Virus record (IMG/VR): IMGVR_UViG_3300028654_000001
Location: 62,001-126,000 of that record
Reading direction: 5' to 3' (one strand)
DNA: 64,000 nt
The notes below the pieces were generated by a model that saw nothing but the letters and a program-made list of their open reading frames with translations, ran no database searches and was not told where the DNA came from. This document shows, piece after piece, positions 15,013-64,000 of the stretch (position 1 is its first letter; the number at the start of each line of letters is the position of its first letter). The position numbers and the translations under genes are program-made.

Positions 15013-15822
15013 ATGTCACCGAGTACGCTACCTTGCCCTCCACTCGAATCGTCTACTCAATCAAGTCCTTCATGGCCTATAGGGTTACACCAGGAGTATT
15101 CCTCCTCTCCCAGTGGCCGTAGTAGCCACCCAGTGGCCAACTTCTCCAAACCCGCCAGCCTCCGCTCCCAAGGCTTCAGCCTAAGACAAGTCTCAAAACT
15201 CACCAGCCTCCACCGGGAAACTCAACTTCCCCACGCCCGTCATAAAGGAAACTCCGGCAAAGCCGGACGGCTTTGCCTCAGACCCAAAGCCAAAATCCAA
15301 GAACTCTTCCAAGATAACTTACCACTCGTCACCTTCGAAGCCGCCAGAGCCCTCAAAAAAGTTCACCACGTCTATGACCTCAAAACCCTCATCCACTTTG
15401 GGTCAATCGGCCTCTGGGACGCCTGCAGGCGCTTCACCGGCGATGAACCCTCATTTCAATCCTATGCCCGTGTCCGCGTCCGGGGGCAAATCTGGGACGA
15501 GATCCGAACCGAATCTCATATCCCCCGCCGAATGATCCGGCCAGATAAAAAACCAACCTTCAACAACATCGACTCCGTTGTCCTCGAATCCCACAACCCA
15601 ACCCCAGAACACCTCCTCCATCTCAAAAACATCCTCCTACAAGTAGACTCTATCCCCTTCACCGACCGAGAACGCCAAGTCATTGACGCCCTCGCCTCCG
15701 GTCAATCACTAGGTGACCTCGCCCTCGCTTGGGGTACCTCCCAACCCTTCGTCAGCCAAATCAAAACTAGAGCCCTCCTCAAGATTGCTGACCTCGCCCA
15801 CAAGGCTGACCTGGATCCATAA
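15013..15822 (+). CDS. RNA polymerase sigma factor, FliA/WhiG-like region 2 plus region 4; start uncertain
   Basis: LIHFGSIGLWDACRRF...FQSYARVRVRGQIWDEIR (region 2); TDRERQVI...SLGDLALAWGTSQPFVSQIKTRALLKI (region 4 HTH). Confidence 0.85.
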   Translation: MSPSTLPCPPLESSTQSSPSWPIGLHQEYSSSPSGRSSHPVANFSKPASLRSQGFSLRQVSKLTSLHRETQLPHARHKGNSGKAGRLCLRPKAKIQELFQDNLPLVTFEAARALKKVHHVYDLKTLIHFGSIGLWDACRRFTGDEPSFQSYARVRVRGQIWDEIRTESHIPRRMIRPDKKPTFNNIDSVVLESHNPTPEHLLHLKNILLQVDSIPFTDRERQVIDALASGQSLGDLALAWGTSQPFVSQIKTRALLKIADLAHKADLDP

Positions 15823-17169: not shown

Positions 17170-18183
17170 TTATACTCCTAGTCCAGCTTCTCGCCACCGG
17201 AGCTTGAACTCCTGAATTAACTCAGCTCCACGCGTCCCCTCCTCAGCCCTGAATTCCTCTATCAGGTAGTGTTCCCCAGCTACATGAGTATAATCCTTTG
17301 GGTAAGCCCATCTACAACCACGACAAACATCAGGATCGTTGTTGTGGCACTTTGAACAAACATCTTCCTTATTTGTATTGTGGGAGGGGCACAGCAACAT
17401 TAGCGCCGATAACCCCTCTGCTCTGAAAACTGAGTTATCTACAATCCTCCAATGTATCCGGTGATCTCCTTGAAGGTTGTCAGTATCACCACAGAATTCG
17501 CACTTACCCCCATACATAGATATCAGAGCTTCCTTCTCTTTTCTACTAAGAGGGTACCTGCCTTCCCGAACCCTAGTAAACTTATCCGGGTCAAACTCAT
17601 ATCGAGTGGTCTGTCTACCATCAACAGTAAGGGATCTCCTTCGAAGAGGGATCCCATAATCCTCAAGTTCGTTGATCGCCCTCTCATCCCGTTCTTCCCG
17701 AACCTCTAAAGAAGTAACAAACCCCTTCTGTAGAATCAGATCACGAATGATGTTACACCTAGGATTGCGCTGTACTCTTCCAGTCTTGGGGGACCTCCTA
17801 GGGGCCAGAAGAGCATCAACAAAGGCTACGGAAGCCTCTGTCATGAGATCTTCTACTACAGTACGATTCGCCGAGGGTACCGCCGCCAAGATCCTTTCAA
17901 CTTGCTCGGATGCCTCAGGCCCGTAAATCCTCCCAATGGGCTCCACAGGAAAAGAACTCTCATCAATCTCCTCATCCCCATCAGGGAACTCAGAATCAAC
18001 TTTCGATCCCTTGCTGAAAAGATCCTTTAGGATCTCATCTTCGTCATCTGACATACTTGAGTACGCAGAAGTTGACCCCCCTTGACAACCATCACAGATA
18101 AACTTCAAGTCATCGGGTAAGCGATCCCCCTGAAGATAAGTCTTCCCACACACTTCACATGTTTTTTCAAAAGGTACAGGCAT
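17170..18183 (-). CDS. HNH endonuclease, KpnI-like restriction-enzyme family
   Basis: GIPL...DGR, CEFCG..LQGDHR, LMLLCPSHNTNK, CSKC..CRGCRWAYPKDYTHVA; N-terminal Zn ribbon. Confidence 0.7.
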   Translation of the reverse strand: MPVPFEKTCEVCGKTYLQGDRLPDDLKFICDGCQGGSTSAYSSMSDDEDEILKDLFSKGSKVDSEFPDGDEEIDESSFPVEPIGRIYGPEASEQVERILAAVPSANRTVVEDLMTEASVAFVDALLAPRRSPKTGRVQRNPRCNIIRDLILQKGFVTSLEVREERDERAINELEDYGIPLRRRSLTVDGRQTTRYEFDPDKFTRVREGRYPLSRKEKEALISMYGGKCEFCGDTDNLQGDHRIHWRIVDNSVFRAEGLSALMLLCPSHNTNKEDVCSKCHNNDPDVCRGCRWAYPKDYTHVAGEHYLIEEFRAEEGTRGAELIQEFKLRWREAGLGV

Positions 18184-51693: not shown

Positions 51694-53848
51694 GTTTCAA
51701 TGAACGGGGAGCCCTTCGGCTCCCCATCTGTTCTAACTTGATAAACACCAACCAACATCGCCTGGACGTGGGCGTCTGCGTTTCAATGAACGGGGAGCCC
51801 TTCGGCTCCCCTCACACCGGTACTCACCGTACCACCGGTCGCGCATGTTTCAATGAACGGGGAGCTCTTCGGCTCCTCTCACCTCGTACAGGGCGTCGAG
51901 AACGCTTAACCTTGGGTGACTTCACCAAAGGTTGGTTTCAATGAACTGGAAGCCCTTCGGCTTCCCTCACCGTACTTCATCCCCACTATCCCTGTGGTTA
52001 CTGCTTTGTTTCAATGAACGGGGAGCTCTTCGGCTCCCCTCACCTTGCTGCAGTGCGACAATTCAAATCCGACGTTTCGTTTCAATGAACGGGGAGCTCT
52101 TCGGCTCCCCTCACCGAGAAAGGCTTGTTGTTTTGTCAATCCGTTCCCAAGTTTCAATGAACGGGGAGCTCTTTGGCTCCCCTCACTCAAGATGTCTGGG
52201 ACCGTTACCAGGACGCGGAATTGTTTCAATGAACGGGGAGCCGAAGGGCTCCCCTCACTTTTCGGGGTAATGGGCTCCGGTGATGCTTTTATCGTTTCAA
52301 TGAACGGGGAGCCCTTCGGCTCCCCTCACACACCTTACCGCGGATGAGCTGCAACAGTACTTAGGTGTTTCAATGAACGGGGAGCCCTTCGGCTCCCCTC
52401 ACCTACCTGAGGCCAGGCTCGAACCCGCAAAGGAGAGTTTCAATGAACGGGGAGCCCTTCGGCTCCCCTCACCAAATAGACTTGGTTCCCCCTCCTCTTC
52501 GATGGCTGTTTCAATGAACGGGGAGCCCTTCGGCTCCCCTCACCCGGTTTTTTTCCGCCTGAGCCCGCGGATGATGATGTTTCAATGAACGGGGAGCCCT
52601 TCGGCTCCCCTCACCGACCGCTTCTTTTACGGACATTTTGATGGTTTCAATGAACGGGGAGCCGAAGGGCTCCCCTCACGATACAGACGCACTGGTTGCC
52701 AGTGTTGCTGGGACACCGTTTCAATTAACGGGGAGCCGAAGGACTCCCCTCACTTCGAGGGCAAATCGGTCCGGGCATTTAGCAAGTCGCGTTTCAATGA
52801 ACGGGGAGCTTTTTGGCTCCCCTCACTAGTGTCGCAAGGGTATGGATTGGAAGAGCCAGTTGTGTTTCAATGAACGGGGAGCTCTTCGGCTCCCCTCACG
52901 AACATGAACTATTGAACGCTCTCCTCCTTAGGCTGTTTCAATGAACGGGGAGCTCTTCGGCTTCCCTCACTCAGAACCGCCCAACTCGAACTTGATGGGG
53001 TCAACACGTTTCAATGAACGGGGAGCCCTTCGGCTTCCCTCACGAAGCAGAACGCTATTACTCGTCGGAGCCCCAGAGGTTTCAATGAACGGGGAGCCCT
53101 TCGGCTTCCCTCACGAAGCAGAACGCTATTACTCGTCGGAGCCCCAGAGGTTTCAATGAACGGGGAGCCCTTCGGCTTCCCTCACCTTCAGTAGGTCCCT
53201 TGAGGTCCTTTTCCATTCACGGAGTTTCGCGTTTCAATGAACGGGGAGCCCTTCGGCTCCCCTCACTGCGTGAGGGGACATCTAGCGGTTCCTTCTTTGG
53301 ATGTTTCAATGAACGGGGAGCTCTTCGGCTCCCCTCACAATCACGTCGAGGTCACGTCCACAGAGTACTAGATCGTTTCAATGAACGGGGAGCTCTTCGG
53401 CTCCCCTCACGACAACGGCAGTAGTCTGCTTGTCTATCCAACCGGTTGTTTCAATGAACGGAGAGCTCTTCGGCTCCCCTTCGGCTCCCCTCACTGGTAA
53501 TTAGCGCCAAGCTTGGCCTTTGGATTGGGAGTTTCAATGAACGGGAAGCCCTTCGGCTCCCCTCACCAGGGCGGATCGAACGCGAGCCAAGGTGGATCGA
53601 TTGGTTTTAATGAACGGGGAGCTCTTCGGCTCCCTTACTGAATAGGTTTGCTAAACCTCATAATTTCAATGAGCAGACCTTTTGATGATCCTACCGAAGT
53701 TCGTTTCAAGTCATTCCAAGCCGCATATGTTTCAATGTTTCAATGTTTCAATGAACGGGGAGCCGAAGAGCTCCCCTCACCTAACATGGGGGACCCGTTG
53801 GATTGTGACTTCGTTTCAATGAACGGGGAGCTCTTCGGCTCCCCTCAC
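51694..53848 (-). CRISPR. CRISPR array, repeat A (GTGAGGGGAGCCGAAGGGCTCCCCGTTCATTGAAAC), about 29 repeats
   Basis: 36-nt repeats with mostly 29-40-nt spacers; many variant repeats; degenerate distal end at 51694. Confidence 0.97.
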
Positions 53849-53893
53849 TTATCAACTCGGCTACCCCTGAGCCTGTCAGATGGGGGTTTGTTT

Positions 53894-54366
53894 GTTTCAA
53901 TGAACGTGGGGATCTTTTGATGATCCCCACCAGGCGAGTGAGCACTACCTGCGATGGTTAGCACCCGTTTCAATGAACGTGGGGATCTTTTGATGATCCC
54001 CACGCATCAATGGGCAGACTTCGCCCTTCGTGAGGGGTTTTTCAATGAACGTGGGGATCTTTTGATGATCCCCACTATGAGTCACCCGGCGTTTTCGGAA
54101 CTGCTTAGGTGTATTTCAATGAACGTGGGGATCTTTTGATGATCCCCACGCACCTGCTAAATCGAAAGCCCCACCCATTGCAACGTTTCAATGAACGTGG
54201 GGATCTTTTGATGATCCCCACCTACGATCTCCATGCTGATGACTCATGCTCGGAATGGTTTCAATGAACGTGGGGATCTTTTGATGATCTCCACACACGG
54301 ACCCGCTATATTGTAGGACGCTGGATCGATCACCAATGAACGTGGGGATCTTTTGATGATCCCCAC
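53894..54366 (-). CRISPR. CRISPR array, repeat B (GTGGGGATCATCAAAAGATCCCCACGTTCATTGAAAC), 7 repeats
   Basis: 37-nt repeats contiguous with array A on the leader side. Confidence 0.95.
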
Positions 54367-54600: not shown

Positions 54601-55128
54601 TTAGCCAGAACCAACCCCTTGATTTCCCCAAGTTATCTGATTTGGAGGGTGTACAATCATCGGAAGGTTATCTGGGTTACCATCGAACATCGACTCACCT
54701 ATTGGATACAGGGTGTCTTCCGAATAGCACAGTCCAATTTCATAATGATTACCACCAGCGCACCCGCCTCCAACACCGATTACTGCATAGACATGACCGA
54801 AGTCAATACCACTTGCTTGGATGAGTTTTTGAGCCCACCCAACCACAAGAGTTTTTTGGGCTTCATCAAAACCATCATCTAGGAAGCTTAGCTTGTCACC
54901 TTCGGGTATGACTCTAAGGTGAAACAACCGGTCTTTTCTTGAATCCACTAGTACCTGGGCCTCGTTGGTGAGCACCTCAGCTATTTCTGGAATGTTGGTT
55001 GTGTCAAGGTAGTAGACAACGGTGTCTGGTTCTCGACCAAAGTAGAATCCTTCATCGACCAGGTACTTGTCTGTTAGAAGCCAGTGTATTTGGATCTCAT
55101 TCATGACTTTTACCCTGTGTACAACCAC
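54601..55128 (-). CDS. Unknown protein, last gene of the cas operon
   Basis: Overlaps 55110..55349. Confidence 0.65.
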   Translation of the reverse strand: MVVHRVKVMNEIQIHWLLTDKYLVDEGFYFGREPDTVVYYLDTTNIPEIAEVLTNEAQVLVDSRKDRLFHLRVIPEGDKLSFLDDGFDEAQKTLVVGWAQKLIQASGIDFGHVYAVIGVGGGCAGGNHYEIGLCYSEDTLYPIGESMFDGNPDNLPMIVHPPNQITWGNQGVGSG

Positions 55129-55349
55129 CGGCTTGACTGGTCTGGGTTGCTACTGGGGGGTACCTGACCGTGGTCTAACTTCTCCTTGATCCTGCAGATG
55201 GCAATGCCAGCTGCGGCCTGTTGAGGGCGAACTCCAAGAGCTTTGGCCAACTGCTCAGTACTGAACTTTTTGTGCTTCTTGGCGAACTCCAAGACTCGGT
55301 TTGCATCCAATCGATCACTAGTTTTTGAACTCTTCTTACGCGCTGCCAT
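55110..55349 (-). CDS. Small winged-HTH protein
   Basis: FSTEQLAKALGVRPQQAAAGIA. Confidence 0.7.
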   Translation of the reverse strand: MAARKKSSKTSDRLDANRVLEFAKKHKKFSTEQLAKALGVRPQQAAAGIAICRIKEKLDHGQVPPSSNPDQSSRWLYTG

Positions 55350-55352
55350 TGA

Positions 55353-56105
55353 TTACCTATCCCATCTCGCCTTGTAGGCGGTTACCATTCCTGCTCTGAA
55401 GAACAGGCGAAGTGTTGCCATTTGTGAGAACGTCTTCCCATCACAATGGTAAAGCTGAAAGTTACTCATCAAGTCACTCACATTGGTAGCAGACCCAACC
55501 CACCCCTTGGATTTCAACTTATTGACCCAAAACTCAGCTTGTTTTTCTTTACTTCTGATCAGATCCCCACCCAACGTTGACTTTTGAACATAGGCATTCG
55601 TAATAACTGCACAGCACTTCAACGGCCCCTTGACTGTAGGTTCCACAACACCATCGACTATGCTGTCAATCTTGTCCACCCAATAATGGTGCCCGAGCTC
55701 GCCGGTGTCGTCAAAATTGAATATCCCGATTGGTCTAGTTGGTGTATTTTCACACAACTTTGAGGCCCGAGCATAACCGTCTGGTTGATACCCATACCTG
55801 AAAAGTATGTCTTTACCAACAGGGCCGCTGTACAGATCAAGATTCCTCTCGTACTCTAACCCTCTAAGTCGACAAATGACCTCTAGGTTGCAGTCAACTC
55901 CAATGAAGTCTCTGTCATCGGTCAGATACTTTCGAATCATGTTAAAAAACTGCCAACCTGAGTAACCTAGTAACTCATAGTAGGAGCAGATTAACTTACC
56001 TCCTGACCAGAGAGGCTTCAGCCTTGGATCTAGGAAAAATGTGCGGTTCATTCGCCACCAGGGGTCCTTGTCAAAAGGGCCTGATTCAGGATTACTCTTC
56101 TTCAT
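55353..56105 (-). CDS. Cas-associated protein, possible SAM-dependent methyltransferase fold
   Basis: YYELLGYSG (motif I-like), FIGVDCN (motif II-like), IFNFDDTG; ATGA-coupled to the helicase. Confidence 0.45.
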   Translation of the reverse strand: MKKSNPESGPFDKDPWWRMNRTFFLDPRLKPLWSGGKLICSYYELLGYSGWQFFNMIRKYLTDDRDFIGVDCNLEVICRLRGLEYERNLDLYSGPVGKDILFRYGYQPDGYARASKLCENTPTRPIGIFNFDDTGELGHHYWVDKIDSIVDGVVEPTVKGPLKCCAVITNAYVQKSTLGGDLIRSKEKQAEFWVNKLKSKGWVGSATNVSDLMSNFQLYHCDGKTFSQMATLRLFFRAGMVTAYKARWDR

Positions 56106-58501
56106 TGGTCGCTCGACTCCCCGCTAACTAGAGCACAGGCCTCTTCAAGAGTTAGACCTTCAGGTAGTTTTTTACCAACTAACCTGCGTAGGTACTTATA
56201 GACAGGGCACCTTCTTCCATGAGACTCCCTGAAGGCTTCTCTATTAGCAGCCACCACCTCATGGTAGTGATCAGTCCACTTATCAAGTTTCTCTCTCCAC
56301 AACTCACCGTACTTTCGTTTGATGGCCCATTGACGGAGCCCTCCAACAAGTACAGGCCCAAAAGCACCCCTCTTTAGGAACGAGTGGCAAGTGGCAAATG
56401 TATAGGTACTACTAGGAGTCAACTTATCCAGTATGTCCGGGCATCTCTCATTGAGTTCAAGAAAGTTATCATAGTATTGTTCCATGTCACTCATGGACTT
56501 TGGTATACACTTTGAGGATATACCACCAAACTTAGAACCCCAGTAAACTAAGTCAACAGATCCAAAGTTATGAAGGGAGTCCGATTGAGTCTTTATCTTG
56601 AACTCCTCACACAAGGCATCCAGTTCTTCTAGTAGGTCTGGGTTATTTGGATCCCTAGCTCGGGTCCTGCGGATGAAAGCCCCATCTAACTTGGGGGAGT
56701 CAGTACTCTCCATCAGACGTTGTATAATAGCCTCATTCAAAGCCTGATCATCAACCTCGATGTACTTTTTCCCGGCTTCCTCAACTTTAGGGATGGCAAC
56801 AAACTTCTCATACACTCTGGCCAACTTCCTGGGGTTGACATCAGCGTCATCCTCTGTTTTGACTGACTCCCACCACTTAAGGGCTTCTCCCACCAGTAAC
56901 CTGGCGTGAAGAGCCTCCTTTGGTTTCACCTGATTCTTTAGGATTGTGTCGGTAACATCGTGATTGAGCTCATTCAGTATGCCGTGCTTCTTGAACACAC
57001 TAATAATCAAGGATATGTTAGAAAGTCCCACCATGGTGGCCAGGGTACTGAGAAGACCCATCAAATATGGGCTACTCTCTTTTTGAGGCGCTGTGATGTA
57101 TACTTGTTTCGACACCCCTTGCCATTTCTCTGGGTAACCCTTGATAGTAGGTACCGCTGTTTTACTGTAGTCACGCTTTCCATTCTCATCCAACTCTATA
57201 TCTAGACGTAGTCTCATGAGACGACCAGGCAACTGTGCTGATAGTACCTCTGACTGTGGGATACCAATGGATATCCCAAGGCACCTGCAAGGGGAATCCA
57301 GCCCTTCAGTAGCTCTCTGGATGGCTAGTATGACAGGATTTTTTTGTATGTCAGAGTAAGTTACACCAGTTATCCTCTCTTTTTCAATGAGATCAGTCAA
57401 CTTATTGTTGCCGCCGAATCCTATGGCATCAACAACATCGACTCCAAACGGCTCCTTCTTGAAAGCCTCTCGTTGTGCAACCCTGAGATCCTCATTAGTG
57501 CTAGCTGGGCAAAAACAACAAGACCTAGAAACTGTAGGTACACGGCCATGCCTATCCCAAATGTCGACCACCTCTTGTGCTAAACCACCGATTTTTTCCG
57601 CCTTAGCCATCAGCATTTCCTGATCAGACTCGGAATCTGGTAGATCTCTCAAGGTGAGATTATCGCTCTGAACTAGTTCAAATTCTAGCCTTTCCGGCGC
57701 AAAACCCCTCAGCATCATTTCAGGGAGAGTTCTCTCAAGAACTAGTGTATCCTTAATGCTTACTTGGCTACCATCCCTCCAAAACCCCGAAGTATATTCA
57801 TTCCACGTTATCTCACGAGTATTTGGTGGCTTCCTGTCAGCTCTGAAGTTCGTTGCGGTAAGCCCACAGCTTGCTGTTGAACCTTGTTCAATTAGATTAG
57901 TTTCAAGATCTCCAAGATCAGTACCCTTAGTGGCTGCGTGGTGCTTCTCATCAGGAATCAGGAGAAGCCTTTTTTTGGAGCCCCTCTTAAACTCTTCCAT
58001 CAGTACTTTTTCGGCTTTTACAAACAACTGATGAGTTACCACGAGAATATTAGACTTCTTTGGAGCTGTAAGAAACCTCCCTAACACATCAAAGAGCTTA
58101 GGTGTATCATCGGAAGTAACTGCTACGACTTCAGGTGTCGTTCGCACCACCCCATTCTTACCTACCCTCTTGTACTTTTCCTGCTTGTACTTTTTCGGAT
58201 TGTCCTTTTCCGGTTTACCCCTAAATTGCTTAACAATGTTACTTTGAGGGGCTACTATCAAGATGTGTGTGAAGGGGTTGTTCTCGGAAGCTAGTATCTC
58301 GGAAGCAATAACCTTGGCTTCTAATGACTTTCCAAGACCAGTACCCCACCAAAGTACCACCCGCTCCTGACCCGCTAGGAGAGCTTGAACGGCCTTACCC
58401 ATATCCTCGTCTTGATAGTATCGTAGGGGTTTTGGAGCTTCTTCGTCACAAGGCGTCAAGGTCCTGACTTGCTTGTATTGTAATGTCTTTGGCATGGGCA
58501 C
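56102..58501 (-). CDS. SF2 DExH helicase without HD nuclease domain (not canonical Cas3)
   Basis: GTGLGKS (Walker A), IPDEKHH (Walker B), GLTAT, ATEGLDSP, QLPGRLMR; helicase core starts within about 25 aa; about 300-aa unknown C-terminus. Confidence 0.85.
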   Translation of the reverse strand: MPMPKTLQYKQVRTLTPCDEEAPKPLRYYQDEDMGKAVQALLAGQERVVLWWGTGLGKSLEAKVIASEILASENNPFTHILIVAPQSNIVKQFRGKPEKDNPKKYKQEKYKRVGKNGVVRTTPEVVAVTSDDTPKLFDVLGRFLTAPKKSNILVVTHQLFVKAEKVLMEEFKRGSKKRLLLIPDEKHHAATKGTDLGDLETNLIEQGSTASCGLTATNFRADRKPPNTREITWNEYTSGFWRDGSQVSIKDTLVLERTLPEMMLRGFAPERLEFELVQSDNLTLRDLPDSESDQEMLMAKAEKIGGLAQEVVDIWDRHGRVPTVSRSCCFCPASTNEDLRVAQREAFKKEPFGVDVVDAIGFGGNNKLTDLIEKERITGVTYSDIQKNPVILAIQRATEGLDSPCRCLGISIGIPQSEVLSAQLPGRLMRLRLDIELDENGKRDYSKTAVPTIKGYPEKWQGVSKQVYITAPQKESSPYLMGLLSTLATMVGLSNISLIISVFKKHGILNELNHDVTDTILKNQVKPKEALHARLLVGEALKWWESVKTEDDADVNPRKLARVYEKFVAIPKVEEAGKKYIEVDDQALNEAIIQRLMESTDSPKLDGAFIRRTRARDPNNPDLLEELDALCEEFKIKTQSDSLHNFGSVDLVYWGSKFGGISSKCIPKSMSDMEQYYDNFLELNERCPDILDKLTPSSTYTFATCHSFLKRGAFGPVLVGGLRQWAIKRKYGELWREKLDKWTDHYHEVVAANREAFRESHGRRCPVYKYLRRLVGKKLPEGLTLEEACALVSGESSDQ

Positions 58502-58561: not shown

Positions 58562-59500
58562 TTAACCGTCAACTATTTCGATCTCAATCCCCTTTTCGGA
58601 AAGGCCGGAGGTGTCGATTGTGATGTCGTAGTCGTCAACCGAGCTCGGAGGGGGTAGCTCCTTGCCCGTCTGGTTCTTTCTGGTAACTTTGACTCTCCGC
58701 ATCAGGCTTGCGGCCGATTCCTTGCCGTTTGCATCAGGGTGCCGAAAGACAATCATCTTGTGGAAGTGATTGTTGGGCCTGGTTGTGGACCGGAATAGGT
58801 CATAGGACTCCCGAGCGTAGTCAAAAAAGTCAGTGAGATCACCGTAGGTGGTTCCCAAACGAGAGGCGCAGAACGGATTGACGTGGATGTTGGTTCGGAA
58901 CAACCCAAAGGATATGACTGGGATCTTACCCATGGTTCGCTCCTTGTCGATATCCTCCTCCTTGGACACGGCGCCGCGGGTGATGGACAGGTTCATGATC
59001 TCGACACGTTCAGCAGTTTCCCCGAAGCACACTTGGATGGGTCCAGTCACTTGTTCGTTGATCGGATTTGTCAGGGCTCCACCGAACCAGCAAACATCAA
59101 TGTACTTAGTCATCATTTTTACAGCGGCTTCCTTCACATCTCGAGATGACATCTTCGGGTCCGACTCTTTATCACCCTTGGCGCCTTTACCCTTGGCGCC
59201 CTTGGTGTCGGAATAGAGATCCCCACAAGCCTCCTTCATCTTGGTGGATAGGGGTAGACCACCGCGAGCGATGTAGACCTCCCTTCCATGAAGTTGTGCC
59301 GTAGCACGCACCCAGCTCTTGAAACACATGGGTGTCTTGATTCCGTTACCTGTTGACGGATCAACTCGTTGCATGTTGTCGTTATCTGGATCTCCATTGC
59401 CGTTGGATAGCTTGGAGTAGTCAATAAAGACAACATCATGCCGGCGATCAATAACTTTTTCACGGTCAAACTGTTTCATAGTATACATCCGATCTTTCAT
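58562..59500 (-). CDS. cas7: Type I-C Cas7 (Csd2)
   Basis: SNGNGDPDNDNMQRVDP, YIDVCWFG, QVTGPIQVCF, SITRGAV..E, ERTMGK. Confidence 0.93.
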   Translation of the reverse strand: MKDRMYTMKQFDREKVIDRRHDVVFIDYSKLSNGNGDPDNDNMQRVDPSTGNGIKTPMCFKSWVRATAQLHGREVYIARGGLPLSTKMKEACGDLYSDTKGAKGKGAKGDKESDPKMSSRDVKEAAVKMMTKYIDVCWFGGALTNPINEQVTGPIQVCFGETAERVEIMNLSITRGAVSKEEDIDKERTMGKIPVISFGLFRTNIHVNPFCASRLGTTYGDLTDFFDYARESYDLFRSTTRPNNHFHKMIVFRHPDANGKESAASLMRRVKVTRKNQTGKELPPPSSVDDYDITIDTSGLSEKGIEIEIVDG

Positions 59501-59596: not shown

Positions 59597-61258
59597 TTAC
59601 TCTAGCCCTTCTTCAGCAGCCGTCGCTTTGATTTTCTCAGAGCGGTAGCGGTAGAGGCCTGCGTTCTGATGTTCATACCCTAGGACAACTAAGCCCTTTT
59701 GAAGGTTGTTTAGGTTACCTCTCGGAATGTTTATTACCTCTGAGGCAACTCTTCCAAAGTGCTCTCTGTATTCCTGAGGGGTTCGCTCACGATAGAGATC
59801 TGGGTTCATGTTTGCGAAGCAACTCTGGGGATTTGCCAAAAAGGTTCGGATTTCCTTGCACTCAGGAACTTTATTGCCTTTGTGGTAGCTGATTCGCATA
59901 TGGTGAAAAGAAGCGATGTACCGCCCCCAAGCATACGCAAGATCACCACACAAGTCTTCGGAGATGGATCCATCCATGAGTCTGATCTTGTCCTCCAACT
60001 CATCCTCGTTGTTTTCCTTCTTGAATGTAATCGACGTCGCCATTACTGTTAGTTCTTTCTGGGCAAGCCCGTGTTCTCGGTAGTAATTTATTTCAGTCCA
60101 CTTGGTGAAGTTAGCTAAGTAAAGGTCACTTGATATGCTGAATAGCTGTTGAGGGATTCGTCCTCCTGTCAGCAAAGCCCACATCGTGTCCTGAATCACT
60201 GATTCAGGGTAGATCGGTTCAAACTTCCCGTTCGAAGTTTCCCCCAGATCACACATGAGCCACCGTAGGTTGACTCGCTGTGGGTTCTGGTACCTCACCT
60301 GCTTCTGAAACAGGAGTAGGTTGTCACGTATCTTACCGACGGTAGTGATAGCCATGTTTCGGATCGAGATGCGAGACATGCTGGGGCGAATCTGAACCAT
60401 ATGAATAGGATCGTTGGTCGACTCAAGATCGGTCAGTATCTTCCAACAGCACTCAACAGCATCCTTGTCCGAGTACCCCATCCCGAGGATTCCCTGAGCC
60501 GCTTCAATGATTGGGTGACTGATTCCGGTAACTGGGATCATCACTATTGATGACTCGTTGGTGTGCACCGCATTGTTTGCAAGCGCGTAACTGAGCCCTG
60601 TCACAACAGTGATTGCTTCCCCAACCTCAATCATGAAGTTGTGCCCTTGCTTCATCCCGAGGAACTTATTGGCCCCTTCGTTAACCGAATGGAGCTTCCC
60701 GTTAGCCCTAACTAAACCAATTCCATTTACTTCGGGTTGGAGTCGAGCTTTTGACCCACCTTTAGCTCCAGACATTAGACTTGGTTCGGTCAGGCAGTCC
60801 GGGTTACCATCTTTCCCAAGGATAGTCAGTTTCTGACTTTGAAACAGCTTGTTGCAAGCTTCGTAACAGGCCGATCCAATGGATTCTAGACTACCAACTG
60901 GTGTACCCTTGAATGTCAGAACAACCCAGTTGGTGGGTTCGATCTCAGGATACTTCAGCGATCCCTCCAAGAACTTGATAGCTGCTTGATACAAGGTCCT
61001 GTGCTTTTTGAAGATCGGTAGGTGAACTTCCCAGAAGACAGACTCAGGGTCGAGTACGACCTTCTTGGAGTCATAGCCCGAACATGGATAGAGAGACGCT
61101 TCTGTGGCACGCCCCGTAATGGCCTTCTGAGGCATCACGAAGGTCTTGTGCTTGGTTGCGACTCCAGTGGTCAGCTCCAAGGTAAAAACATTCTTACGAG
61201 TCTCTGGGGTGGCATCAACTCGACTTCCTAGGGATTGGAGATCCCAATAGAGGTTCAT
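59597..61258 (-). CDS. cas8c: Divergent type I-C Cas8c (Csd1) large subunit
   Basis: KLHSVNEGA..FLG..QG.N, AYAWGR, QKGLVVLGYEHQ; lies between cas5 and cas7. Confidence 0.8.
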   Translation of the reverse strand: MNLYWDLQSLGSRVDATPETRKNVFTLELTTGVATKHKTFVMPQKAITGRATEASLYPCSGYDSKKVVLDPESVFWEVHLPIFKKHRTLYQAAIKFLEGSLKYPEIEPTNWVVLTFKGTPVGSLESIGSACYEACNKLFQSQKLTILGKDGNPDCLTEPSLMSGAKGGSKARLQPEVNGIGLVRANGKLHSVNEGANKFLGMKQGHNFMIEVGEAITVVTGLSYALANNAVHTNESSIVMIPVTGISHPIIEAAQGILGMGYSDKDAVECCWKILTDLESTNDPIHMVQIRPSMSRISIRNMAITTVGKIRDNLLLFQKQVRYQNPQRVNLRWLMCDLGETSNGKFEPIYPESVIQDTMWALLTGGRIPQQLFSISSDLYLANFTKWTEINYYREHGLAQKELTVMATSITFKKENNEDELEDKIRLMDGSISEDLCGDLAYAWGRYIASFHHMRISYHKGNKVPECKEIRTFLANPQSCFANMNPDLYRERTPQEYREHFGRVASEVINIPRGNLNNLQKGLVVLGYEHQNAGLYRYRSEKIKATAAEEGLE

Positions 61259-61905
61259 GCTGACCTCCTATTGAGCCGCTTGATTCCCATGTTTCGAACA
61301 ACGTCCCAAGAAGGATATCGAACAACCCCGTGTGACATGGTCAACGGTGCAAAGTAATACGGTGTTTCTGGATCATCCCAATCAACATCATAGAACATCA
61401 GGCCGAAGTCAGGCGAGATATCGACTGGGTTTGCAGGCTCTTCAGCGGCTTCCAAGTAACACTTGCACTCGGAGGTTCCAAAGTAGATGCGCCGTCGTTC
61501 AACACCCATCCGAAGACGATCTCGGAACATCTTGTCGAACTTTGGGATATTGTCCTCAGGGCCGGCTTTACTTGAAAGCTTGAATTGGCACTCAATAATG
61601 CAATCGTAATTCCGTAGATAAGTCGACGTTCGTTGAGTCCGGTCCTCTTCAATAATGATAGGTTTGTTTGGGGAGTTTGAGTCAAAGCTCAGTTCGTTGA
61701 GAAGCATAGGGTGGTATACTGGCTTACTTTGGAGGGATAGACTGAGGATCCTCCAATCAATTGCCTTGTGCCCGCATATCCCCCTTGGAAGGGCAACCCC
61801 CGCTGAGTGAGATGGGATCAGTGAACTGATCCTCTCTGACCTGAATGCTGGTTGGTTGAACAATGCATAGGGTCCCCATGCATGTATCCTGTATATTGGT
61901 GACAT
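61255..61905 (-). CDS. cas5: Type I-C Cas5 (Cas5c/Cas5d)
   Basis: WGPYALFNQP..RSER, IEEDRTQR, YFGTSEC, DFGLMFYDVD, MSHGVV. Confidence 0.92.
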   Translation of the reverse strand: MSPIYRIHAWGPYALFNQPAFRSERISSLIPSHSAGVALPRGICGHKAIDWRILSLSLQSKPVYHPMLLNELSFDSNSPNKPIIIEEDRTQRTSTYLRNYDCIIECQFKLSSKAGPEDNIPKFDKMFRDRLRMGVERRRIYFGTSECKCYLEAAEEPANPVDISPDFGLMFYDVDWDDPETPYYFAPLTMSHGVVRYPSWDVVRNMGIKRLNRRSA

Positions 61906-62059
61906 CTAGTTCGATTCCTCCTGGTTTGATTGACTTTCCTACTTGGGAGTGGCTAAGGTAGCCACCTTCTATGAAGTTTAGCAAGACACTTCTCAATCAG
62001 GTCGTATAATAAGTAGGATGTTGACCCACACCAGTGATTTTGGTTGAACTAGACTACCT

Positions 62060-62283
62060 TACCAGCTACATTCGAATGGATCTGCATCAGTTATGCGAGA
62101 GGTTAGGTGCCACTAAAAGTAAGGCAACCTCTCGCATACTAGCTAGGTCTTTGAAAATTGATATTAATCAATTAGCTAGCAGCTACCAATTGCACGAGTT
62201 TAACTGAGTTACCTGAAGTTCGAAACGTAGTTCTCGAGATCAATCCTGTAACTGGTTGGACTCTCTAGTTCTATAGGTGACTA
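62060..62283 (+). promoter_or_regulatory. CRISPR leader for array C
   Basis: ATGCGAGAGG...CCTCTCGCAT...TTGAAAATTGAT at 62093-62162. Confidence 0.75.
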
Positions 62284-63986
62284 CTGGGGATCCTTGATTG
62301 GATCCCCGTTCATTGAAACTCTCGATACAATGCTCCCAGAGGAAGCCTCTCGGTCAGCTGGGGATCCTTGATTGGATCCCCGTTCATTGAAACAGCTTCG
62401 CCACGATGACCGTTTGCGCCTCCCCGTCTTCTGGGGATCCTTGATTGGATCCCCGTTCATTGAAACCCGTAAAGGCGTCAACGTCATCTCGATTCCCATT
62501 CTTGCTGGGGATCCTTGATTGGATCCCCGTTCATTGAAACCTTTCAGTGCCGGTTCTCAGAGATGGGGAGAAGGACCTGGGGATCCTTGATTGGATCCCC
62601 GTTCATTGAAACGATTGTGTGCAGAACGTCGTCGAGCGCGGTGCGTCCTGGGGATCCTTGATTGGATCCCCGTTCATTGAAACACGGAAACTTGCGGAAG
62701 GTCGAATAAAGGGTGAGAACTGGGGATCCTTGATTGGATCCCCGTTCATTGAAACAATGTTGCTGTTTTCCCATCGCCACTCGCAGCGGTCTGGGGATCC
62801 TTGATTGGATCCCCGTTCATTGAAACCATCTCGTTGACCATGGTCCCACCCACTACGAGTGGCTGGGGATCCTTGATTGGATCCCCGTTCATTGAAACCA
62901 CGCTCTGAGAGGGGCATTCGTTACAGCAATGATGGCTGGGGATCCTTGATTGGATCCCCGTTCATTGAAACAAACGAGTCACGGCAATTGCACCGCGTAC
63001 TGGCCCGAGGTCTGGGGATCCTTGATTGGATCCCCGTTCATTGAAACAGGAGCTCTGCGTCTTGACGTAGGAGGCCTTCAGGCTGGGGATCCTTGATTGG
63101 ATCCCCGTTCATTGAAACCAAGTCCTCAAGTTCCTGCGATTCGCTCCGATCATTCTCTGGGGATCCTTGATTGGATCCCCGTTCATTGAAACGTCAATAA
63201 CCTAATGATTCGGTTCGCAGGCTCTGGGCCTGGGGATCCTTGATTGGATCCCCGTTCATTGAAACGAAGAGTATCATCGCTCGAAGTTTCACCTGTAGCA
63301 GGCTGGGGATCCTTGATTGGATCCCCGTTCATTGAAACGATCCACTGAAGACCCTGACTCCTCGGACTTAGGGCTGGGGATCCTTGATTGGATCCCCGTT
63401 CATTGAAACGGAGCCCTACCTAGTCTGTTCAAGAGCGAGGGAGAGCTGGGGATCCTTGATTGGATCCCCGTTCATTGAAACTGGAACCTTCTTCTGCTCT
63501 ACCGACAGACCGTTGAGCAGCTGGGGATCCTTGATTGGATCCCCGTTCATTGAAACGGCCCTCTTGGGCTGACACCCGGACCCATAAAGATCTGGGGATC
63601 CTTGATTGGATCCCCGTTCATTGAAACTTGGGTTTGATTTTGACTATCCGCTCTCCATAGCAGCTGGGGATCCTTGATTGGATCCCCGTTCATTGAAACG
63701 AGACCAAGACAAGGATTATTCCTCCTCGTCCAGTCTGGGGATCCTTGATTGGATCCCCGTTCATTGAAACACGTCCATGAGTCGCTTGGTCTGATTGGCG
63801 CAAAGTAGCTGGGGATCCTTGATTGGATCCCCGTTCATTGAAACTGGTTGAGGTGAAATCGGTTCGGGCAGCTCGTTGGCTGGGGATCCTTGATTGGATC
63901 CCCGTTCATTGAAACACTCAGCTCCCGAACTCGTTCGAGTCGCTCACGGACTGGGGATCCTTGATTGGATCCCCGTTCATTGAAAC
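62284..63986 (+). CRISPR. CRISPR array, repeat C (CTGGGGATCCTTGATTGGATCCCCGTTCATTGAAAC), 24 identical repeats, likely continues past the window
   Basis: Invariant 36-nt repeats with 34-40-nt unique spacers. Confidence 0.98.
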
Positions 63987-64000
63987 GACAGTAGCAACGC

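What the first reader, a model, noticed from the sequence alone, without database searches (positions are those of the whole stretch)
55353..56105. Possible methyltransferase-fold protein translationally coupled to the CRISPR helicase
Seen: a hydrophobic strand plus ELLGYSG, then FIGVD about 20 aa later, then IFNFDDTG. This matches the spacing of Rossmann SAM-binding motifs I, II and IV. Inference: if real, Cascade plus helicase could deliver a methyl mark or SAM-dependent activity in an RNA-guided way. The motif match is weak and made by eye.
Basis: inference. Interest (0 to 1): 0.62.

Follow-up and report, generated by a model that had tools for sequence, protein, structure and literature searches.

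The report
Methyltransferase-fold partner of phage CRISPR helicase
In a 512-kb soil phage, a 250-residue gene overlaps the end of the helicase gene that replaces Cas3 in a CRISPR system with no recognisable nuclease; it is predicted with confidence to have the fold of a SAM-dependent methyltransferase and is a conserved, so far unannotated part of that system, so this system may modify rival-phage DNA rather than cut it.

Summary
The ORF lies on the minus strand at 55353-56105 (250 aa). It carries ELLGYSG, FIGVD and IFNFDDTG, and its ATG overlaps the helicase stop codon (ATGA).

It is a real gene: dN/dS is 0.16 against a 77% identical homologue. It belongs to a rare family of 27 cluster representatives among 1.84 billion proteins, with no NCBIfam, PHROGs or PADLOC match.

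With a 28-sequence alignment AlphaFold2 gives pLDDT 86.8 and pTM 0.88. All top-50 PDB matches, by Foldseek and by VIA-align (Z 10-12), have the class I SAM-methyltransferase or spermidine-synthase fold. The canonical cofactor positions are conserved: G47 28/28, an acidic residue at the end of β2 28/28, D109 26/28, D132 28/28.

In 10 of 10 contexts examined the gene directly follows a ResIII/HsdR/XPB-like SF2 helicase. In 9 of 10 this pair follows Cas5c-Cas8c-Cas7c. The genome has no Cas3 HD domain and no Cas1.

A complex model supports helicase binding (ipSAE 0.80, best control 0.00). One spacer matches two 42-47 kb phages next to a TTC PAM.

The fold claim is supported. SAM binding and RNA-guided methylation remain untested. 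The helicase-associated I-C variant was published in 2020, and there this gene is labelled "hypothetical protein".

The parts
55353..56105 (-). ORF250: a 250-aa protein with a class I SAM-methyltransferase fold, the subject of the finding
   Evidence: ORF. Family of 27 representatives. AF2 model pLDDT 86.8 / pTM 0.88. MTase-fold matches only. dN/dS 0.16.
55956..55976 (-). Motif I-like loop E44-L-L-G47-Y-S49-G50, between β1 (41-45) and helix 50-60
   Evidence: Column counts E44 25E+2D, G47 28/28, S49 22S+4T, G50 26/28. Secondary structure.
55893..55907 (-). Motif II-like F67-I-G-V-D71, with an acidic residue at the C-terminal end of β2
   Evidence: D71 is 23 D + 5 E = 28/28 acidic. β2 is 67-71.
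55779..55781 (-). D109, the motif III-like Asp just after β3 (103-106)
   Evidence: 26 D + 1 E of 28. Aligns with the D of the DG motif of E. coli SpeE in a weak hhalign.
55701..55724 (-). Motif IV-like I128-F-N-F-D132-D-T134-G at the end of β4, with invariant D132
   Evidence: D132 28/28, T134 19/28. Aligns with D-C-T-D-P-I-G of E. coli SpeE (pairwise E 0.014, not significant).
55407..55421 (-). β7 signature M229-A-T231-L-R233 (family consensus RMATLRL), the most conserved stretch of the family; role unknown
   Evidence: M229, T231 and R233 are 28/28.
56102..58501 (-). 799-aa SF2 helicase/translocase (ResIII type) that stands where Cas3 would be; it has about 350 C-terminal residues of unknown fold
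   Evidence: Weak NCBIfam matches to EcoAI-type HsdR and the Dnd restriction enzyme, plus PHROG DNA helicase and PADLOC PbeA. Profile against PDB: XPBII 1.6e-9, HsdR 3e-9, LlaGI 3e-7, LlaBIII 7e-7, no Cas3. Walker A GTGLGKS, DEKHH, TAT and QxxGRxxR are kept.
56777..56875 (-). Helicase residues 543-575, the predicted contact with ORF250 residues 68-113
   Evidence: complex prediction ipSAE 0.80/0.80/0.81, best of 3 controls 0.00. This interface is less conserved than average.
58562..59500 (-). cas7c (Csd2)
   Evidence: TIGR02589 2e-39; PADLOC Cas7b/c 1e-50.
59597..61258 (-). cas8c (Csd1)-like large subunit, divergent
   Evidence: TIGR01863 1.6e-7; PADLOC Cas8c 3e-10. Homologues carry Pfam Cas_Csd1.
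61255..61905 (-). cas5c (Cas5d)
   Evidence: TIGR01876 8e-17; PADLOC Cas5c 3e-26.
61906..62283 (.). Intergenic region between cas5 and array 1; inferred leader and divergent promoter region
   Evidence: Inference from the repeat orientation. Not tested.
62284..64000 (+). CRISPR array 1: 28 identical 36-nt repeats that run past the window end to position 64269. Read on the + strand each repeat is a hairpin followed by GTTCATTGAAAC.
   Evidence: Spacer 26 (about 62393-62429) matches two phage contigs 37/37 next to a TTC PAM.
51694..54366 (-). CRISPR array 2: about 36 repeats with three different hairpin sequences and the same GTTCATTGAAAC handle when read on the - strand. It lies directly downstream of the cas operon.
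55110..55349 (-). ORF79: a small conserved protein with an HTH-like stretch (FSTEQLAKALGVRPQQAAAGIAI) and a conserved NPDQSSRW tail. It follows ORF250 in most loci.
   Evidence: Alignment A5: homologous in 5 of 6 loci. Also present in the published Biggiephage. dN/dS 0.12. The HTH assignment is by eye only.
54601..55128 (-). ORF175: unknown, and its membership of the module is doubtful
   Evidence: No family match. Not similar to the gene at the same place in L005. Uninformative atlas hits.

Best explanation
ORF250 is a class I (Rossmann-like) SAM-methyltransferase-fold enzyme that forms a complex with the SF2 helicase encoded just upstream. Together the two proteins take the place of Cas3 as the effector module of a phage-borne type I-C-derived CRISPR system that has no adaptation genes and no recognisable nuclease. 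The proposed sequence of events is as follows. Cas5c processes crRNAs from the two flanking arrays. Cas5c-Cas8c-Cas7c Cascade finds TTC-flanked protospacers in the DNA of rival phages and opens an R-loop. Instead of Cas3, the ResIII/HsdR/XPB-like ATPase is recruited, carrying ORF250 on a helix of its C-terminal region. ORF250 then uses SAM (or a close analogue) to modify nucleic acid at or near the target, most likely at an amino group, given the invariant Asp at the end of β4. What is shown: the gene is real and under purifying selection; the fold; conservation of the cofactor-pocket positions; strict gene linkage; absence of Cas3 HD and Cas1 from the complete genome; a protospacer in other phages with the I-C PAM. 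What is modelled only: the helicase-ORF250 contact. What is inferred: SAM binding (my estimate about 0.6), catalytic activity (about 0.45), and that the substrate is the Cascade-bound target DNA (about 0.25-0.3).
For: Gene: an intact ORF; dN/dS 0.16 against the 77% identical homologue in L002; identical sequence apart from one synonymous SNP in contigs of four other rhizosphere metagenome runs. Family: 27 representatives at E<=1e-3, all 207-276 aa apart from one 132-aa fragment. Fold: pLDDT 86.8 and pTM 0.88 with strand/helix order β1-αA-β2-αB-β3-αC-β4-αD-β5-αE-β6-β7. Foldseek against PDB: the top 50 are all class I MTase fold (49 SAM methyltransferases and one spermidine synthase), best 5wcj at E 3e-5. 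VIA-align against 48,161 chains: the top 50 all have the class I MTase or spermidine-synthase fold, Z 10.0-11.9, 157-193 residues aligned, rmsd 3.2-5.2; the second look agrees. One family member matches NF005379 'class I SAM-dependent methyltransferase' at E 0.0011. Cofactor positions: G47 28/28, G50 26/28, D/E71 28/28, D109 26/28, D132 28/28, N170 28/28. Positions that are at least 90% conserved lie at the C-terminal ends of β1, β3, β4 and β5 and on β6/β7, not on the predicted helicase interface (mean conservation 0.32 against 0.40 overall); that is the pattern of an enzyme rather than a pure adaptor. Linkage: a helicase homologue lies immediately upstream in 10/10 contexts and Cas5d-Csd1-Cas7 in 9/10, down to family members at E 4.5e-4. 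Complex: ipSAE 0.80, best of 3 controls 0.00; that mark was reached by 58 of 80 solved complexes and 2 of 110 mismatched pairs; the runs agree in at least 61% of their contacts and the partner pLDDT is at least 83 (own alignments and a riding SAM were used, so the calibration holds only roughly). No Cas3 HD and no Cas1 in the 512,571-bp DTR genome. The helicase is nearest to XPBII, HsdR and the type ISP enzymes LlaGI/LlaBIII. Target: spacer 26 matches two phage contigs of 42 and 47 kb at 37/37, with TTC 5' of the protospacer on the crRNA-identical strand.
Against: No methyltransferase family profile matches the query. The fold matches are middling (Foldseek TM 0.29-0.46, Z about 11-12, identity at most 16%) and show only the fold. 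Motif I is E-x-x-G-x-S-G, not GxGxG. In the published Biggiephage orthologue motif I reads D-L-M-G-E-Q-N, D109 is N and T231 is N, so the glycine loop is not strictly kept. There is no DPPY/NPPY, PC or K-D-K-E catalytic signature, so the substrate cannot be read from the sequence. The nearest structures are spermidine synthases, METTL13 and tRNA/rRNA methyltransferases rather than DNA methyltransferases. The modelled helicase contact (residues 68-70 and 103-108) lies next to D71 and D109, so the helicase might occlude or gate the cofactor pocket. The interface is poorly conserved, and the score is a model's confidence, not a measurement. SAM rode along in the complex job but was not scored. 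No expression data exist: no RNA run holds the locus.
Confidence: 0.45

Rival explanations
1. ORF250 is a non-catalytic adaptor or cofactor-sensing subunit. The methyltransferase fold is kept as a scaffold, possibly still binding SAM as an allosteric ligand in the way SAM is needed for restriction by classical type I R-M enzymes. It loads or licenses the helicase on the Cascade R-loop. Interference is nuclease-independent and is carried out by the translocase alone, through transcription or replication roadblocks or by displacing proteins, as proposed for type IV-A CasDinG.
For: The complex model supports a helicase-ORF250 contact. Motif I is non-canonical and further degraded in the Biggiephage orthologue. 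There is no recognisable catalytic motif IV. The predicted contact borders the cofactor pocket. [quoted passage not shown]
Against: The invariant residues (G47, D132, N170, M229, T231, R233, plus D/E71 and D109) sit at active-site-type positions, while the modelled interface is less conserved than average. A pure adaptor would be expected to show the reverse. dN/dS of 0.16 indicates strong constraint on the whole protein.
Confidence: 0.27
2. ORF250 is an active transferase whose substrate is not the targeted DNA. It could methylate RNA (the crRNA or a transcript) or a protein amine (Cascade, the helicase or a host factor). Alternatively it could act like a spermidine-synthase-type aminopropyl or alkyl transferase on a small amine.
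For: The top structural neighbours are spermidine and spermine synthases (6i1n Z 11.9, 1xj5 Z 11.6, 3c6m), METTL13 (a protein N-terminal/lysine MTase) and tRNA/rRNA enzymes (Trm1, Trm5b, RlmM, RlmJ, METTL16). hhalign against E. coli SpeE puts motifs I-IV roughly in register (motif II offset by one residue), with D132-x-T134-x-x-x-G138 on D-C-T-D-P-I-G.
Against: All those Z scores are tied within about 1.5 units across many subfamilies. The hhalign E of 0.014 for a single pair, with probability 3%, is not significant. The GGGDG loop that marks aminopropyl transferases is absent. A strict 10/10 linkage to a DNA translocase and 9/10 linkage to a DNA-targeting Cascade is hard to explain for a small-molecule enzyme.
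Confidence: 0.2
3. The motif match is chance and the protein is not a methyltransferase-fold protein at all.
For: The first AF2 model, made from 3 close sequences, was poor (pLDDT 37.9). The ESM Atlas model of the same protein is mediocre (pLDDT 0.57). No sequence profile matches.
Against: With 28 diverse sequences all five models reach pLDDT 85-87. 50 of 50 top matches in two independent structure searches of the PDB have the class I MTase fold. The Atlas's own model also lands on RNA methyltransferases and Trm1. The motif positions are conserved across the family.
Confidence: 0.04

Closest known systems
[quoted passage not shown] 2020, PMC7162821; Biggiephage SR-VP_PHAGE_CIR_63_141)
   Same: Both have Cas5c-Cas8c-Cas7c, no Cas1/Cas2, 'a helicase protein instead of Cas3', and a huge-phage host genome. 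The published GenBank file shows the same gene order. It includes a 231-aa ORF overlapping the helicase stop that carries the family signatures FIGVDTD, FLNLD, INL, YDIYKS and YRMANLRL, followed by the small HTH-like protein.
   Different: This is a different phage: 512,571 bp at 49% GC from rhizosphere, against 465,583 bp with '63' in its name from vernal-pool mud. In the paper's file the ORF250 homologue and the helicase are both labelled 'hypothetical protein', and neither the text nor the legend of Extended Data Fig. 9 mentions the gene. Here two arrays flank the operon. I did not test whether this genome has CasΦ.
Canonical type I-C CRISPR-Cas (Cascade + Cas3)
   Same: Cas5c, Cas8c and Cas7c are present. 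The repeat is a hairpin plus an 11-nt ...AUUGAAAC handle. A TTC PAM flanks the one protospacer found.
   Different: There is no Cas3 HD nuclease and no Cas1 in the whole genome. The helicase is not of the Cas3 family. There is an extra methyltransferase-fold gene and a small HTH-like gene.
Type IV-A CRISPR-Cas (Csf Cascade + CasDinG)
   Same: Both are carried by mobile elements, lack an adaptation module, and have a helicase in place of a nuclease. Interference is thought to be non-nucleolytic.
   Different: The Cascade is of I-C descent, not Csf. The helicase is ResIII/HsdR/XPB-like SF2, not DinG/XPD-like. No methyltransferase-fold partner is described for type IV-A, to my knowledge.
Type I and type ISP restriction-modification enzymes (HsdR+HsdM+HsdS; LlaGI/LlaBIII)
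   Same: An SF2 dsDNA-translocase-type ATPase is physically coupled to a methyltransferase-fold module, and a separate specificity module chooses the site. The helicase profile matches HsdR (3h1t, 3e-9), LlaGI (3e-7) and LlaBIII (7e-7). By analogy, Cascade would play the part of HsdS or the TRD.
   Different: The similarity is confined to the RecA-like domains. No PD-(D/E)xK or Mrr nuclease domain was detected. ORF250 has no NPPY/F motif and DNA N6-adenine methylases are not among its top structural neighbours. The analogy is mine and is not a demonstrated descent.
Spermidine synthase / METTL13-C subgroup of the class I fold
   Same: These are the best or tied-best structural matches over the whole length (6i1n Z 11.9 with 187 aligned; 5wcj Z 11.8). 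There is an Asp at the end of β4 followed by x-T-x-x-x-G, as in D-[SC]-T-D-P-x-G.
   Different: There is no GGGDG loop and no N-terminal β-hairpin domain. Identity is 7-11% and the profile comparison is not significant.

Membership tests
Class I SAM-dependent methyltransferase fold (superfamily) | Alternating β/α core with seven strands, the last two forming an antiparallel hairpin (β6-β7) | tested here: met
   The AF2 model (pLDDT 86.8, pTM 0.88) has β1 41-45, β2 67-71, β3 103-106, β4 126-136, β5 164-173, β6 217-220 and β7 228-237, with helices between them. 50/50 top matches in Foldseek-PDB and in VIA-align wide have this fold. This is a predicted structure, not an experimental one.
Class I SAM-dependent methyltransferase fold (superfamily) | Glycine-rich motif I loop after β1 (canonically [DE]-x-G-x-G-x-G) | tested here: inconclusive
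   The family has E44-x-x-G47-x-S49-G50 (E 25/28, G47 28/28, S/T 26/28, G50 26/28). It is similar to the canonical loop but not identical. The Biggiephage orthologue keeps only the first Gly.
Class I SAM-dependent methyltransferase fold (superfamily) | Acidic residue at the C-terminal end of β2 (ribose hydroxyl ligand) | tested here: met
   D71 is 23 D + 5 E = 28/28, at the last residue of β2.
Class I SAM-dependent methyltransferase fold (superfamily) | A recognised catalytic motif IV after β4 (DPPY/NPPY, PC, or the D of K-D-K-E) | tested here: inconclusive
   There is an invariant D132 at the end of β4 (28/28), but the context F-N-F-D-x-T matches no known signature.
Class I SAM-dependent methyltransferase fold (superfamily) | Match to a curated methyltransferase sequence model | tested here: not met
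   The query has no match in NCBIfam, PHROGs or PADLOC. The family profile has none against PDB sequences. Only 1 of 28 members reaches NF005379, at E 0.0011.
Class I SAM-dependent methyltransferase fold (superfamily) | Binds SAM and transfers a methyl group | not testable with these tools
   SAM rode along in the complex job but small molecules are not scored.
Type I-C CRISPR-Cas | Cas5c, Cas8c and Cas7c effector genes | tested here: met
   TIGR01876, TIGR01863 and TIGR02589, and PADLOC Cas5c/Cas8c/Cas7c.
Type I-C CRISPR-Cas | Cas3 (HD nuclease plus Cas3-type helicase) | tested here: not met
   There is no cas3_HD match in the complete genome at E<=0.1, while the control genomes matched. The adjacent helicase matches HsdR, XPB and type ISP enzymes, not Cas3.
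Type I-C CRISPR-Cas | Adaptation module (Cas1, Cas2, Cas4) | tested here: not met
   Cas1 is absent from the genome. Cas2 and Cas4 were not searched for.
Type I-C CRISPR-Cas | Repeat with a hairpin and an 11-nt 3' handle ending AUUGAAAC; TTC PAM | tested here: met
   The repeats of both arrays end GTTCATTGAAAC. The one protospacer found is preceded by TTC (n = 1 protospacer in two related phages).
Type IV-A CRISPR-Cas | DinG-family helicase and Csf-type Cascade | tested here: not met
   The Cascade genes are I-C. There is no DinG/XPD match among the PDB matches of the helicase profile.
Type I / ISP restriction-modification | HsdR/ResIII-type SF2 translocase | tested here: met
   Pfam ResIII on the homologues. 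PDB profile matches to HsdR at 3e-9 and to LlaGI/LlaBIII at 3e-7 and 7e-7, over the RecA-like domains only.
Type I / ISP restriction-modification | N6-adenine methyltransferase with an NPPY/F motif, and a PD-(D/E)xK or Mrr nuclease | tested here: not met
   ORF250 has no NPPY/F. No nuclease model matches the helicase or its neighbours. The fold of the helicase's C-terminal 350 aa was not determined.
Spermidine synthase (aminopropyl transferase) | GGGDG(G) loop with the Asp that selects decarboxylated SAM; D-[SC]-T-D-P after β4 | tested here: inconclusive
   The loop is absent. D132-x-T-x-x-x-G aligns with D-C-T-D-P-I-G of E. coli SpeE, but at pairwise E 0.014 and probability 3%. The structural Z of 11-12 is tied with many methyltransferases.

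The most novel reading that the evidence does not exclude
This would be a natural RNA-guided nucleic-acid modifying machine. A type I-C Cascade recruits a translocase-methyltransferase heterodimer instead of Cas3, and so writes a SAM-dependent mark on the DNA of a rival phage, at the R-loop or along the track of the helicase, rather than cutting it. In logic it would be a CRISPR-guided counterpart of type I/ISP restriction-modification enzymes, with Cascade replacing the specificity subunit.
Probability: 0.25. Interest if true: 0.92.

Novelty: new variant of a known kind. Interest (0 to 1): 0.68.

Why it matters
All characterised class 1 CRISPR effectors end in a nuclease, a transposase, or a bare helicase or roadblock. 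Here a complete 512-kb phage genome carries two arrays of about 64 repeats in total, a I-C Cascade and a spacer that matches other phages next to the correct PAM. It has no recognisable nuclease. In the nuclease's place is a strictly linked pair of a translocase and a methyltransferase-fold protein. If the fold is catalytically used, this is a natural programmable epigenetic or base-modifying system, and a compact starting point for tools that need only four small Cascade-type genes plus two effector genes. If it is not used, the pair still defines how a non-Cas3 helicase is coupled to Cascade, and it supplies a missing signature gene for classifying the 'helicase-associated I-C variant'. Either way the question becomes directly testable with six genes and one array.

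Tried and rejected
- AF2 with only the three close homologues gave pLDDT 37.9. I discarded that model in favour of the 28-sequence one.
- NCBIfam, PHROGs and PADLOC gave nothing for ORF250, ORF79 or ORF175.
- The family profile against PDB sequences gave only non-significant caspase p20 matches (E 0.13-1.3), which I rejected as chance.
- The search for homologous proteins found only 2 close relatives for the single protein and nothing new for the profile.
- hhalign of the family against E. coli RsmD gave no alignment, so I do not claim an RsmD/DPPY-type relationship.
- The genome search with TIGR00095 gave no loci from the control genomes.
- Six spacers were scanned in seven public-collection scans. 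One matched foreign DNA. The other scans found nothing or only the phage itself. Only spacer 26 of either array matches the two target phages anywhere in their genomes.
- No spacer targets the phage's own genome.
- ORF175 was considered as a possible missing nuclease. It has no family, a poor Atlas model and no conservation in L005, so it is not supported.
- The 2022 Cell paper on virus-encoded CRISPR-Cas systems is not held. I could not check whether it mentions this gene.
- No RNA runs hold the locus, so expression is untested.
Full report
OBSERVATION. The coordinates 55353-56105 delimit one ORF of 250 codons on the minus strand; the plus-strand reading is full of stops. The ATG of the ORF overlaps the TGA of the upstream 799-codon helicase gene as ATGA, and the next gene (79 codons) starts 3 nt after the ORF's stop codon. 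So both the observation and the 'translational coupling' are confirmed.

IS IT A GENE, AND IS THERE A FAMILY? The word-indexed search of 5.8 billion proteins found only two close relatives, at 77% and 73% identity. An exhaustive phmmer run over 1.84 billion cluster representatives found 27 proteins at E<=0.001; all are 207-276 aa except one 132-aa fragment. Against the 77% identical homologue in L002 the gene has dN 0.143, dS 0.908 and dN/dS 0.16, which is comparable to cas8 at 0.12 and the helicase at 0.23. Contigs from four further rhizosphere metagenome runs carry the identical sequence with a single change, a synonymous Leu CTG>CTT at 55560. None of NCBIfam, PHROGs or PADLOC has a model that matches the query, and a family profile finds nothing significant among PDB sequences.

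FOLD. A first AlphaFold2 run with three close sequences failed (pLDDT 37.9). With the 28-sequence alignment A2 all five models reach pLDDT 85-87; the best has pLDDT 86.8 and pTM 0.88. The order of elements is β1 41-45, helix 50-60, β2 67-71, helix 74-80, β3 103-106, helix 110-119, β4 126-136, helix 141-159, β5 164-173, helix 182-199, β6 217-220, β7 228-237 and a short β8. This is the class I methyltransferase topology, preceded by two N-terminal helices.

Structure searches agree:
- Foldseek against 350,542 PDB chains: the top 50 are all class I MTase fold (49 SAM-dependent methyltransferases and one spermidine synthase); the best is METTL13, 5wcj, at E 3.1e-5, with TM 0.29-0.46.
- VIA-align against 48,161 representative chains, which does not depend on Foldseek: the top 50 all have the class I methyltransferase or spermidine/spermine-synthase fold, with Z 10.0-11.9, 157-193 residues aligned and rmsd 3.2-5.2 Å.
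- The second look puts spermidine synthases (6i1n Z 11.9; 1xj5 Z 11.6), METTL13, Trm1, Trm5b, RlmM and METTL16 at the top, all tied within about 1.5 Z units.
- BFVD and the ESM Atlas give the same picture.

MOTIFS. In the family alignment these positions are among the most conserved:
- E44: 25 E + 2 D
- G47: 28/28
- S49: 22 S + 4 T
- G50: 26/28
- D71: 23 D + 5 E, so always acidic
- D109, after β3: 26 D + 1 E
- D132: 28/28
- N170, at the end of β5: 28/28
- Y219: 27/28
- M229, T231 and R233 on β7: 28/28

There are caveats. The loop is E-x-x-G-x-S-G rather than GxGxG. No DPPY/NPPY, PC or K-D-K-E signature is present. In the published Biggiephage orthologue the loop reads D-L-M-G-E-Q-N, and D109 and T231 are both Asn. 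One family member matches a curated 'class I SAM-dependent methyltransferase' model at E 0.0011. A profile-to-sequence comparison with E. coli spermidine synthase puts motifs I-IV roughly in register, with motif II offset by one residue and with D132-x-T134-x-x-x-G138 on D-C-T-D-P-I-G. Its pairwise E of 0.014 and probability of 3% are not significant, so this is a lead only. E. coli RsmD gave nothing.

CONTEXT. The window lies in a 512,571-bp virus record with direct terminal repeats, 49% GC, from rhizosphere metagenomes. On the minus strand the operon reads cas5c (61255-61905), cas8c-like (59597-61258), cas7c (58562-59500), helicase (56102-58501), ORF250, ORF79 and ORF175. It is flanked by two CRISPR arrays:
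- Array 1 has 28 identical 36-nt repeats from 62284 to beyond the window end.
- Array 2 has about 36 repeats at 51694-54366, with three different hairpin sequences.

Read in the sense in which they end GTTCATTGAAAC, which is the I-C-type 3' handle, array 1 is on the plus strand and diverges from the operon, while array 2 is on the minus strand downstream of it. The whole genome has no Cas3 HD domain and no Cas1, and no spacer targets the phage itself.

LINKAGE. I examined the genomic context of eight family representatives, spanning E-values from 1e-126 to 4.5e-4, and also read the published Biggiephage file. A homologue of the helicase lies immediately upstream in all of them, either overlapping or within 4 nt. 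Cas5d-Csd1-Cas7 precede it in all but one. I-C-style arrays follow the module in L003, L007 and L010.

The exception is L005. It carries only a 575-aa protein homologous to helicase residues 255-799 (32% identity, E 1e-72), followed by the ORF250 homologue and the small protein, with no Cascade genes and no repeats in the 11.9 kb held. ORF79 is homologous in 5 of 6 loci. ORF250 is thus a signature gene of this system and is most tightly tied to the C-terminal two-thirds of the helicase.

THE HELICASE. It keeps Walker A (GTGLGKS), DEKHH, TAT and QxxGRxxR. Its profile matches XPBII (1.6e-9), a type I HsdR subunit (3e-9), the type ISP enzymes LlaGI and LlaBIII (3e-7, 7e-7), RadD, Hef and RapA, and no Cas3. 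NCBIfam gives weak EcoAI-type HsdR and Dnd-restriction matches. It therefore looks like a dsDNA translocase of the restriction-enzyme/XPB kind.

COMPLEX MODEL. Helicase residues 255-799 were folded with ORF250, with SAM riding along. The result was ipSAE 0.80, 0.80 and 0.81 in three runs, against 0.00 for the best of three controls. That mark was reached by 58 of 80 solved complexes and 2 of 110 mismatched pairs in the tool's calibration. The runs agree in at least 61% of their contacts and the partner pLDDT is at least 83. Because my own alignments and a ligand were used, those counts hold only roughly. The contact is between helicase residues 543-575 and ORF250 residues 68-113, that is β2, the following helix, the variable insertion and β3, which form the edge of the sheet next to D71 and D109. 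The interface residues are less conserved than average on both sides (0.32 against 0.40; 0.35 against 0.46), whereas the positions that are at least 90% conserved are the pocket and active-site-type positions listed above. I read this as support for binding and as a hint that the protein is an enzyme rather than only a bridge. It is also a reason not to trust the exact interface.

TARGETS. Six spacers were scanned against public collections. One of them, array 1 spacer 26, matches 37/37 in two related IMG/VR phage contigs of 42.3 and 47.4 kb. On the strand identical to the crRNA, the protospacer is preceded by TTC, the canonical I-C PAM. This fits the inferred array orientation and implies DNA targeting of smaller, presumably competing, phages. 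The targeted ORF has no known family.

LITERATURE. Al-Shayeb et al. [quoted passage not shown] In the supplementary GenBank file of that phage the ORF250 homologue and the helicase are both 'hypothetical protein'. Full-text searches for a CRISPR- or Cascade-associated methyltransferase in phages found nothing relevant. The 2022 Cell paper on virus-encoded CRISPR systems is not held, so I cannot exclude that it mentions the gene.

MECHANISM AND RIVALS. My best reading (0.45) is an active SAM-dependent transferase that is carried by the translocase and brought to Cascade R-loops in place of Cas3. My estimates for the sub-steps are: fold about 0.9, helicase binding about 0.75, SAM binding about 0.6, and modification of the targeted DNA about 0.25-0.3.

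The main rival (0.27) is a non-catalytic or SAM-sensing adaptor in the manner of HsdM, with silencing done by the translocase. A second rival (0.2) is an enzyme acting on RNA, protein or a small amine, as the nearest structures would suggest. That the fold assignment is simply wrong seems unlikely (0.04).

The analogy to type I/ISP restriction-modification, with translocase plus methyltransferase fold plus a swappable specificity module, is my inference. It rests only on the helicase similarities and on the architecture.

VERDICT. The system is a published variant, but the identity of its second signature gene as a methyltransferase-fold helicase partner appears to be undescribed in the literature I could reach. 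The function remains open, but it is directly testable.

Noticed in passing
window 51694-54366: A second CRISPR array of about 36 repeats lies directly downstream of the cas operon. Its repeats fall into at least three hairpin variants (GGGGAGCC..GGCTCCCC, GGGGAGCT..GGCTCCCC, GGGGATC..GATCCCC). All keep the same GTTCATTGAAAC handle, so the changes preserve the stem. One spacer is duplicated (53044-53078 and 53115-53149).
   Followed up: partly
window 62284-64000 and G000:126270-126470 (beyond the window): Array 1 diverges from the cas operon when read in the sense that ends ATTGAAAC. Two degenerate repeats lie at its far end, which fits a leader on the cas5 side (61906-62283).
   Followed up: partly
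window about 62393-62429; L023:520-556; L024:2286-2322: Array 1 spacer 26 matches two related phage contigs of 42-47 kb at 37/37, with a TTC PAM. Only this one spacer of either array matches them anywhere in their genomes.
   Followed up: yes
window 55110-55349: A 79-aa protein with an HTH-like stretch and a conserved NPDQSSRW-Y-TG tail follows ORF250 in most loci. In the published Biggiephage the array separates it from ORF250. It may be a regulator or a fourth effector subunit.
   Followed up: partly
L005:8281-10981: This is a 'solo' module: a 575-aa homologue of helicase residues 255-799 that lacks the first RecA-like domain, then the ORF250 homologue, then the small protein. There are no Cascade genes or repeats in the 11.9 kb held.
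   Followed up: partly
L004:526-2642: In one contig the helicase is called as two ORFs of 215 and 474 aa, whereas the otherwise identical ORF250 homologue in L003 follows a single 721-aa helicase. This is either a frameshift or assembly error, or a genuinely split gene.
   Followed up: no
L005:4228-5163 and the ENA contig of P0003 (7634-8569): An RNA ligase gene (PF09414) lies within a few kb of the module in two unrelated contigs.
   Followed up: no
window 15013-15822, 17170-18183, 6911-9355: Other phage genes in the window include a sigma-factor-like protein (phrog_351, 4e-14), a 337-aa protein with an HNH endonuclease domain (6e-5) and an 814-aa protein with a tail-fibre-like N-terminus. 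Most of the large ORFs tested have no PHROG match, and there are no tRNA genes in the window.
   Followed up: no
ORF250 model, ESM Atlas: The Atlas's own model of ORF250 is close to a 231-aa viral cluster with no family (TM 0.65/0.69). It is also close to 'three-Cys-motif partner protein TcmP' (PF22560, TM 0.60) and to a 538-aa Pseudomonadota cluster (TM 0.65 by query). These are possible distant relatives outside CRISPR loci.
   Followed up: no
window 54601-58501: The same phage sequence occurs in contigs of at least five rhizosphere metagenome runs from different studies, at low depth. There is only one difference in 3.9 kb, a synonymous change at 55560.
   Followed up: yes
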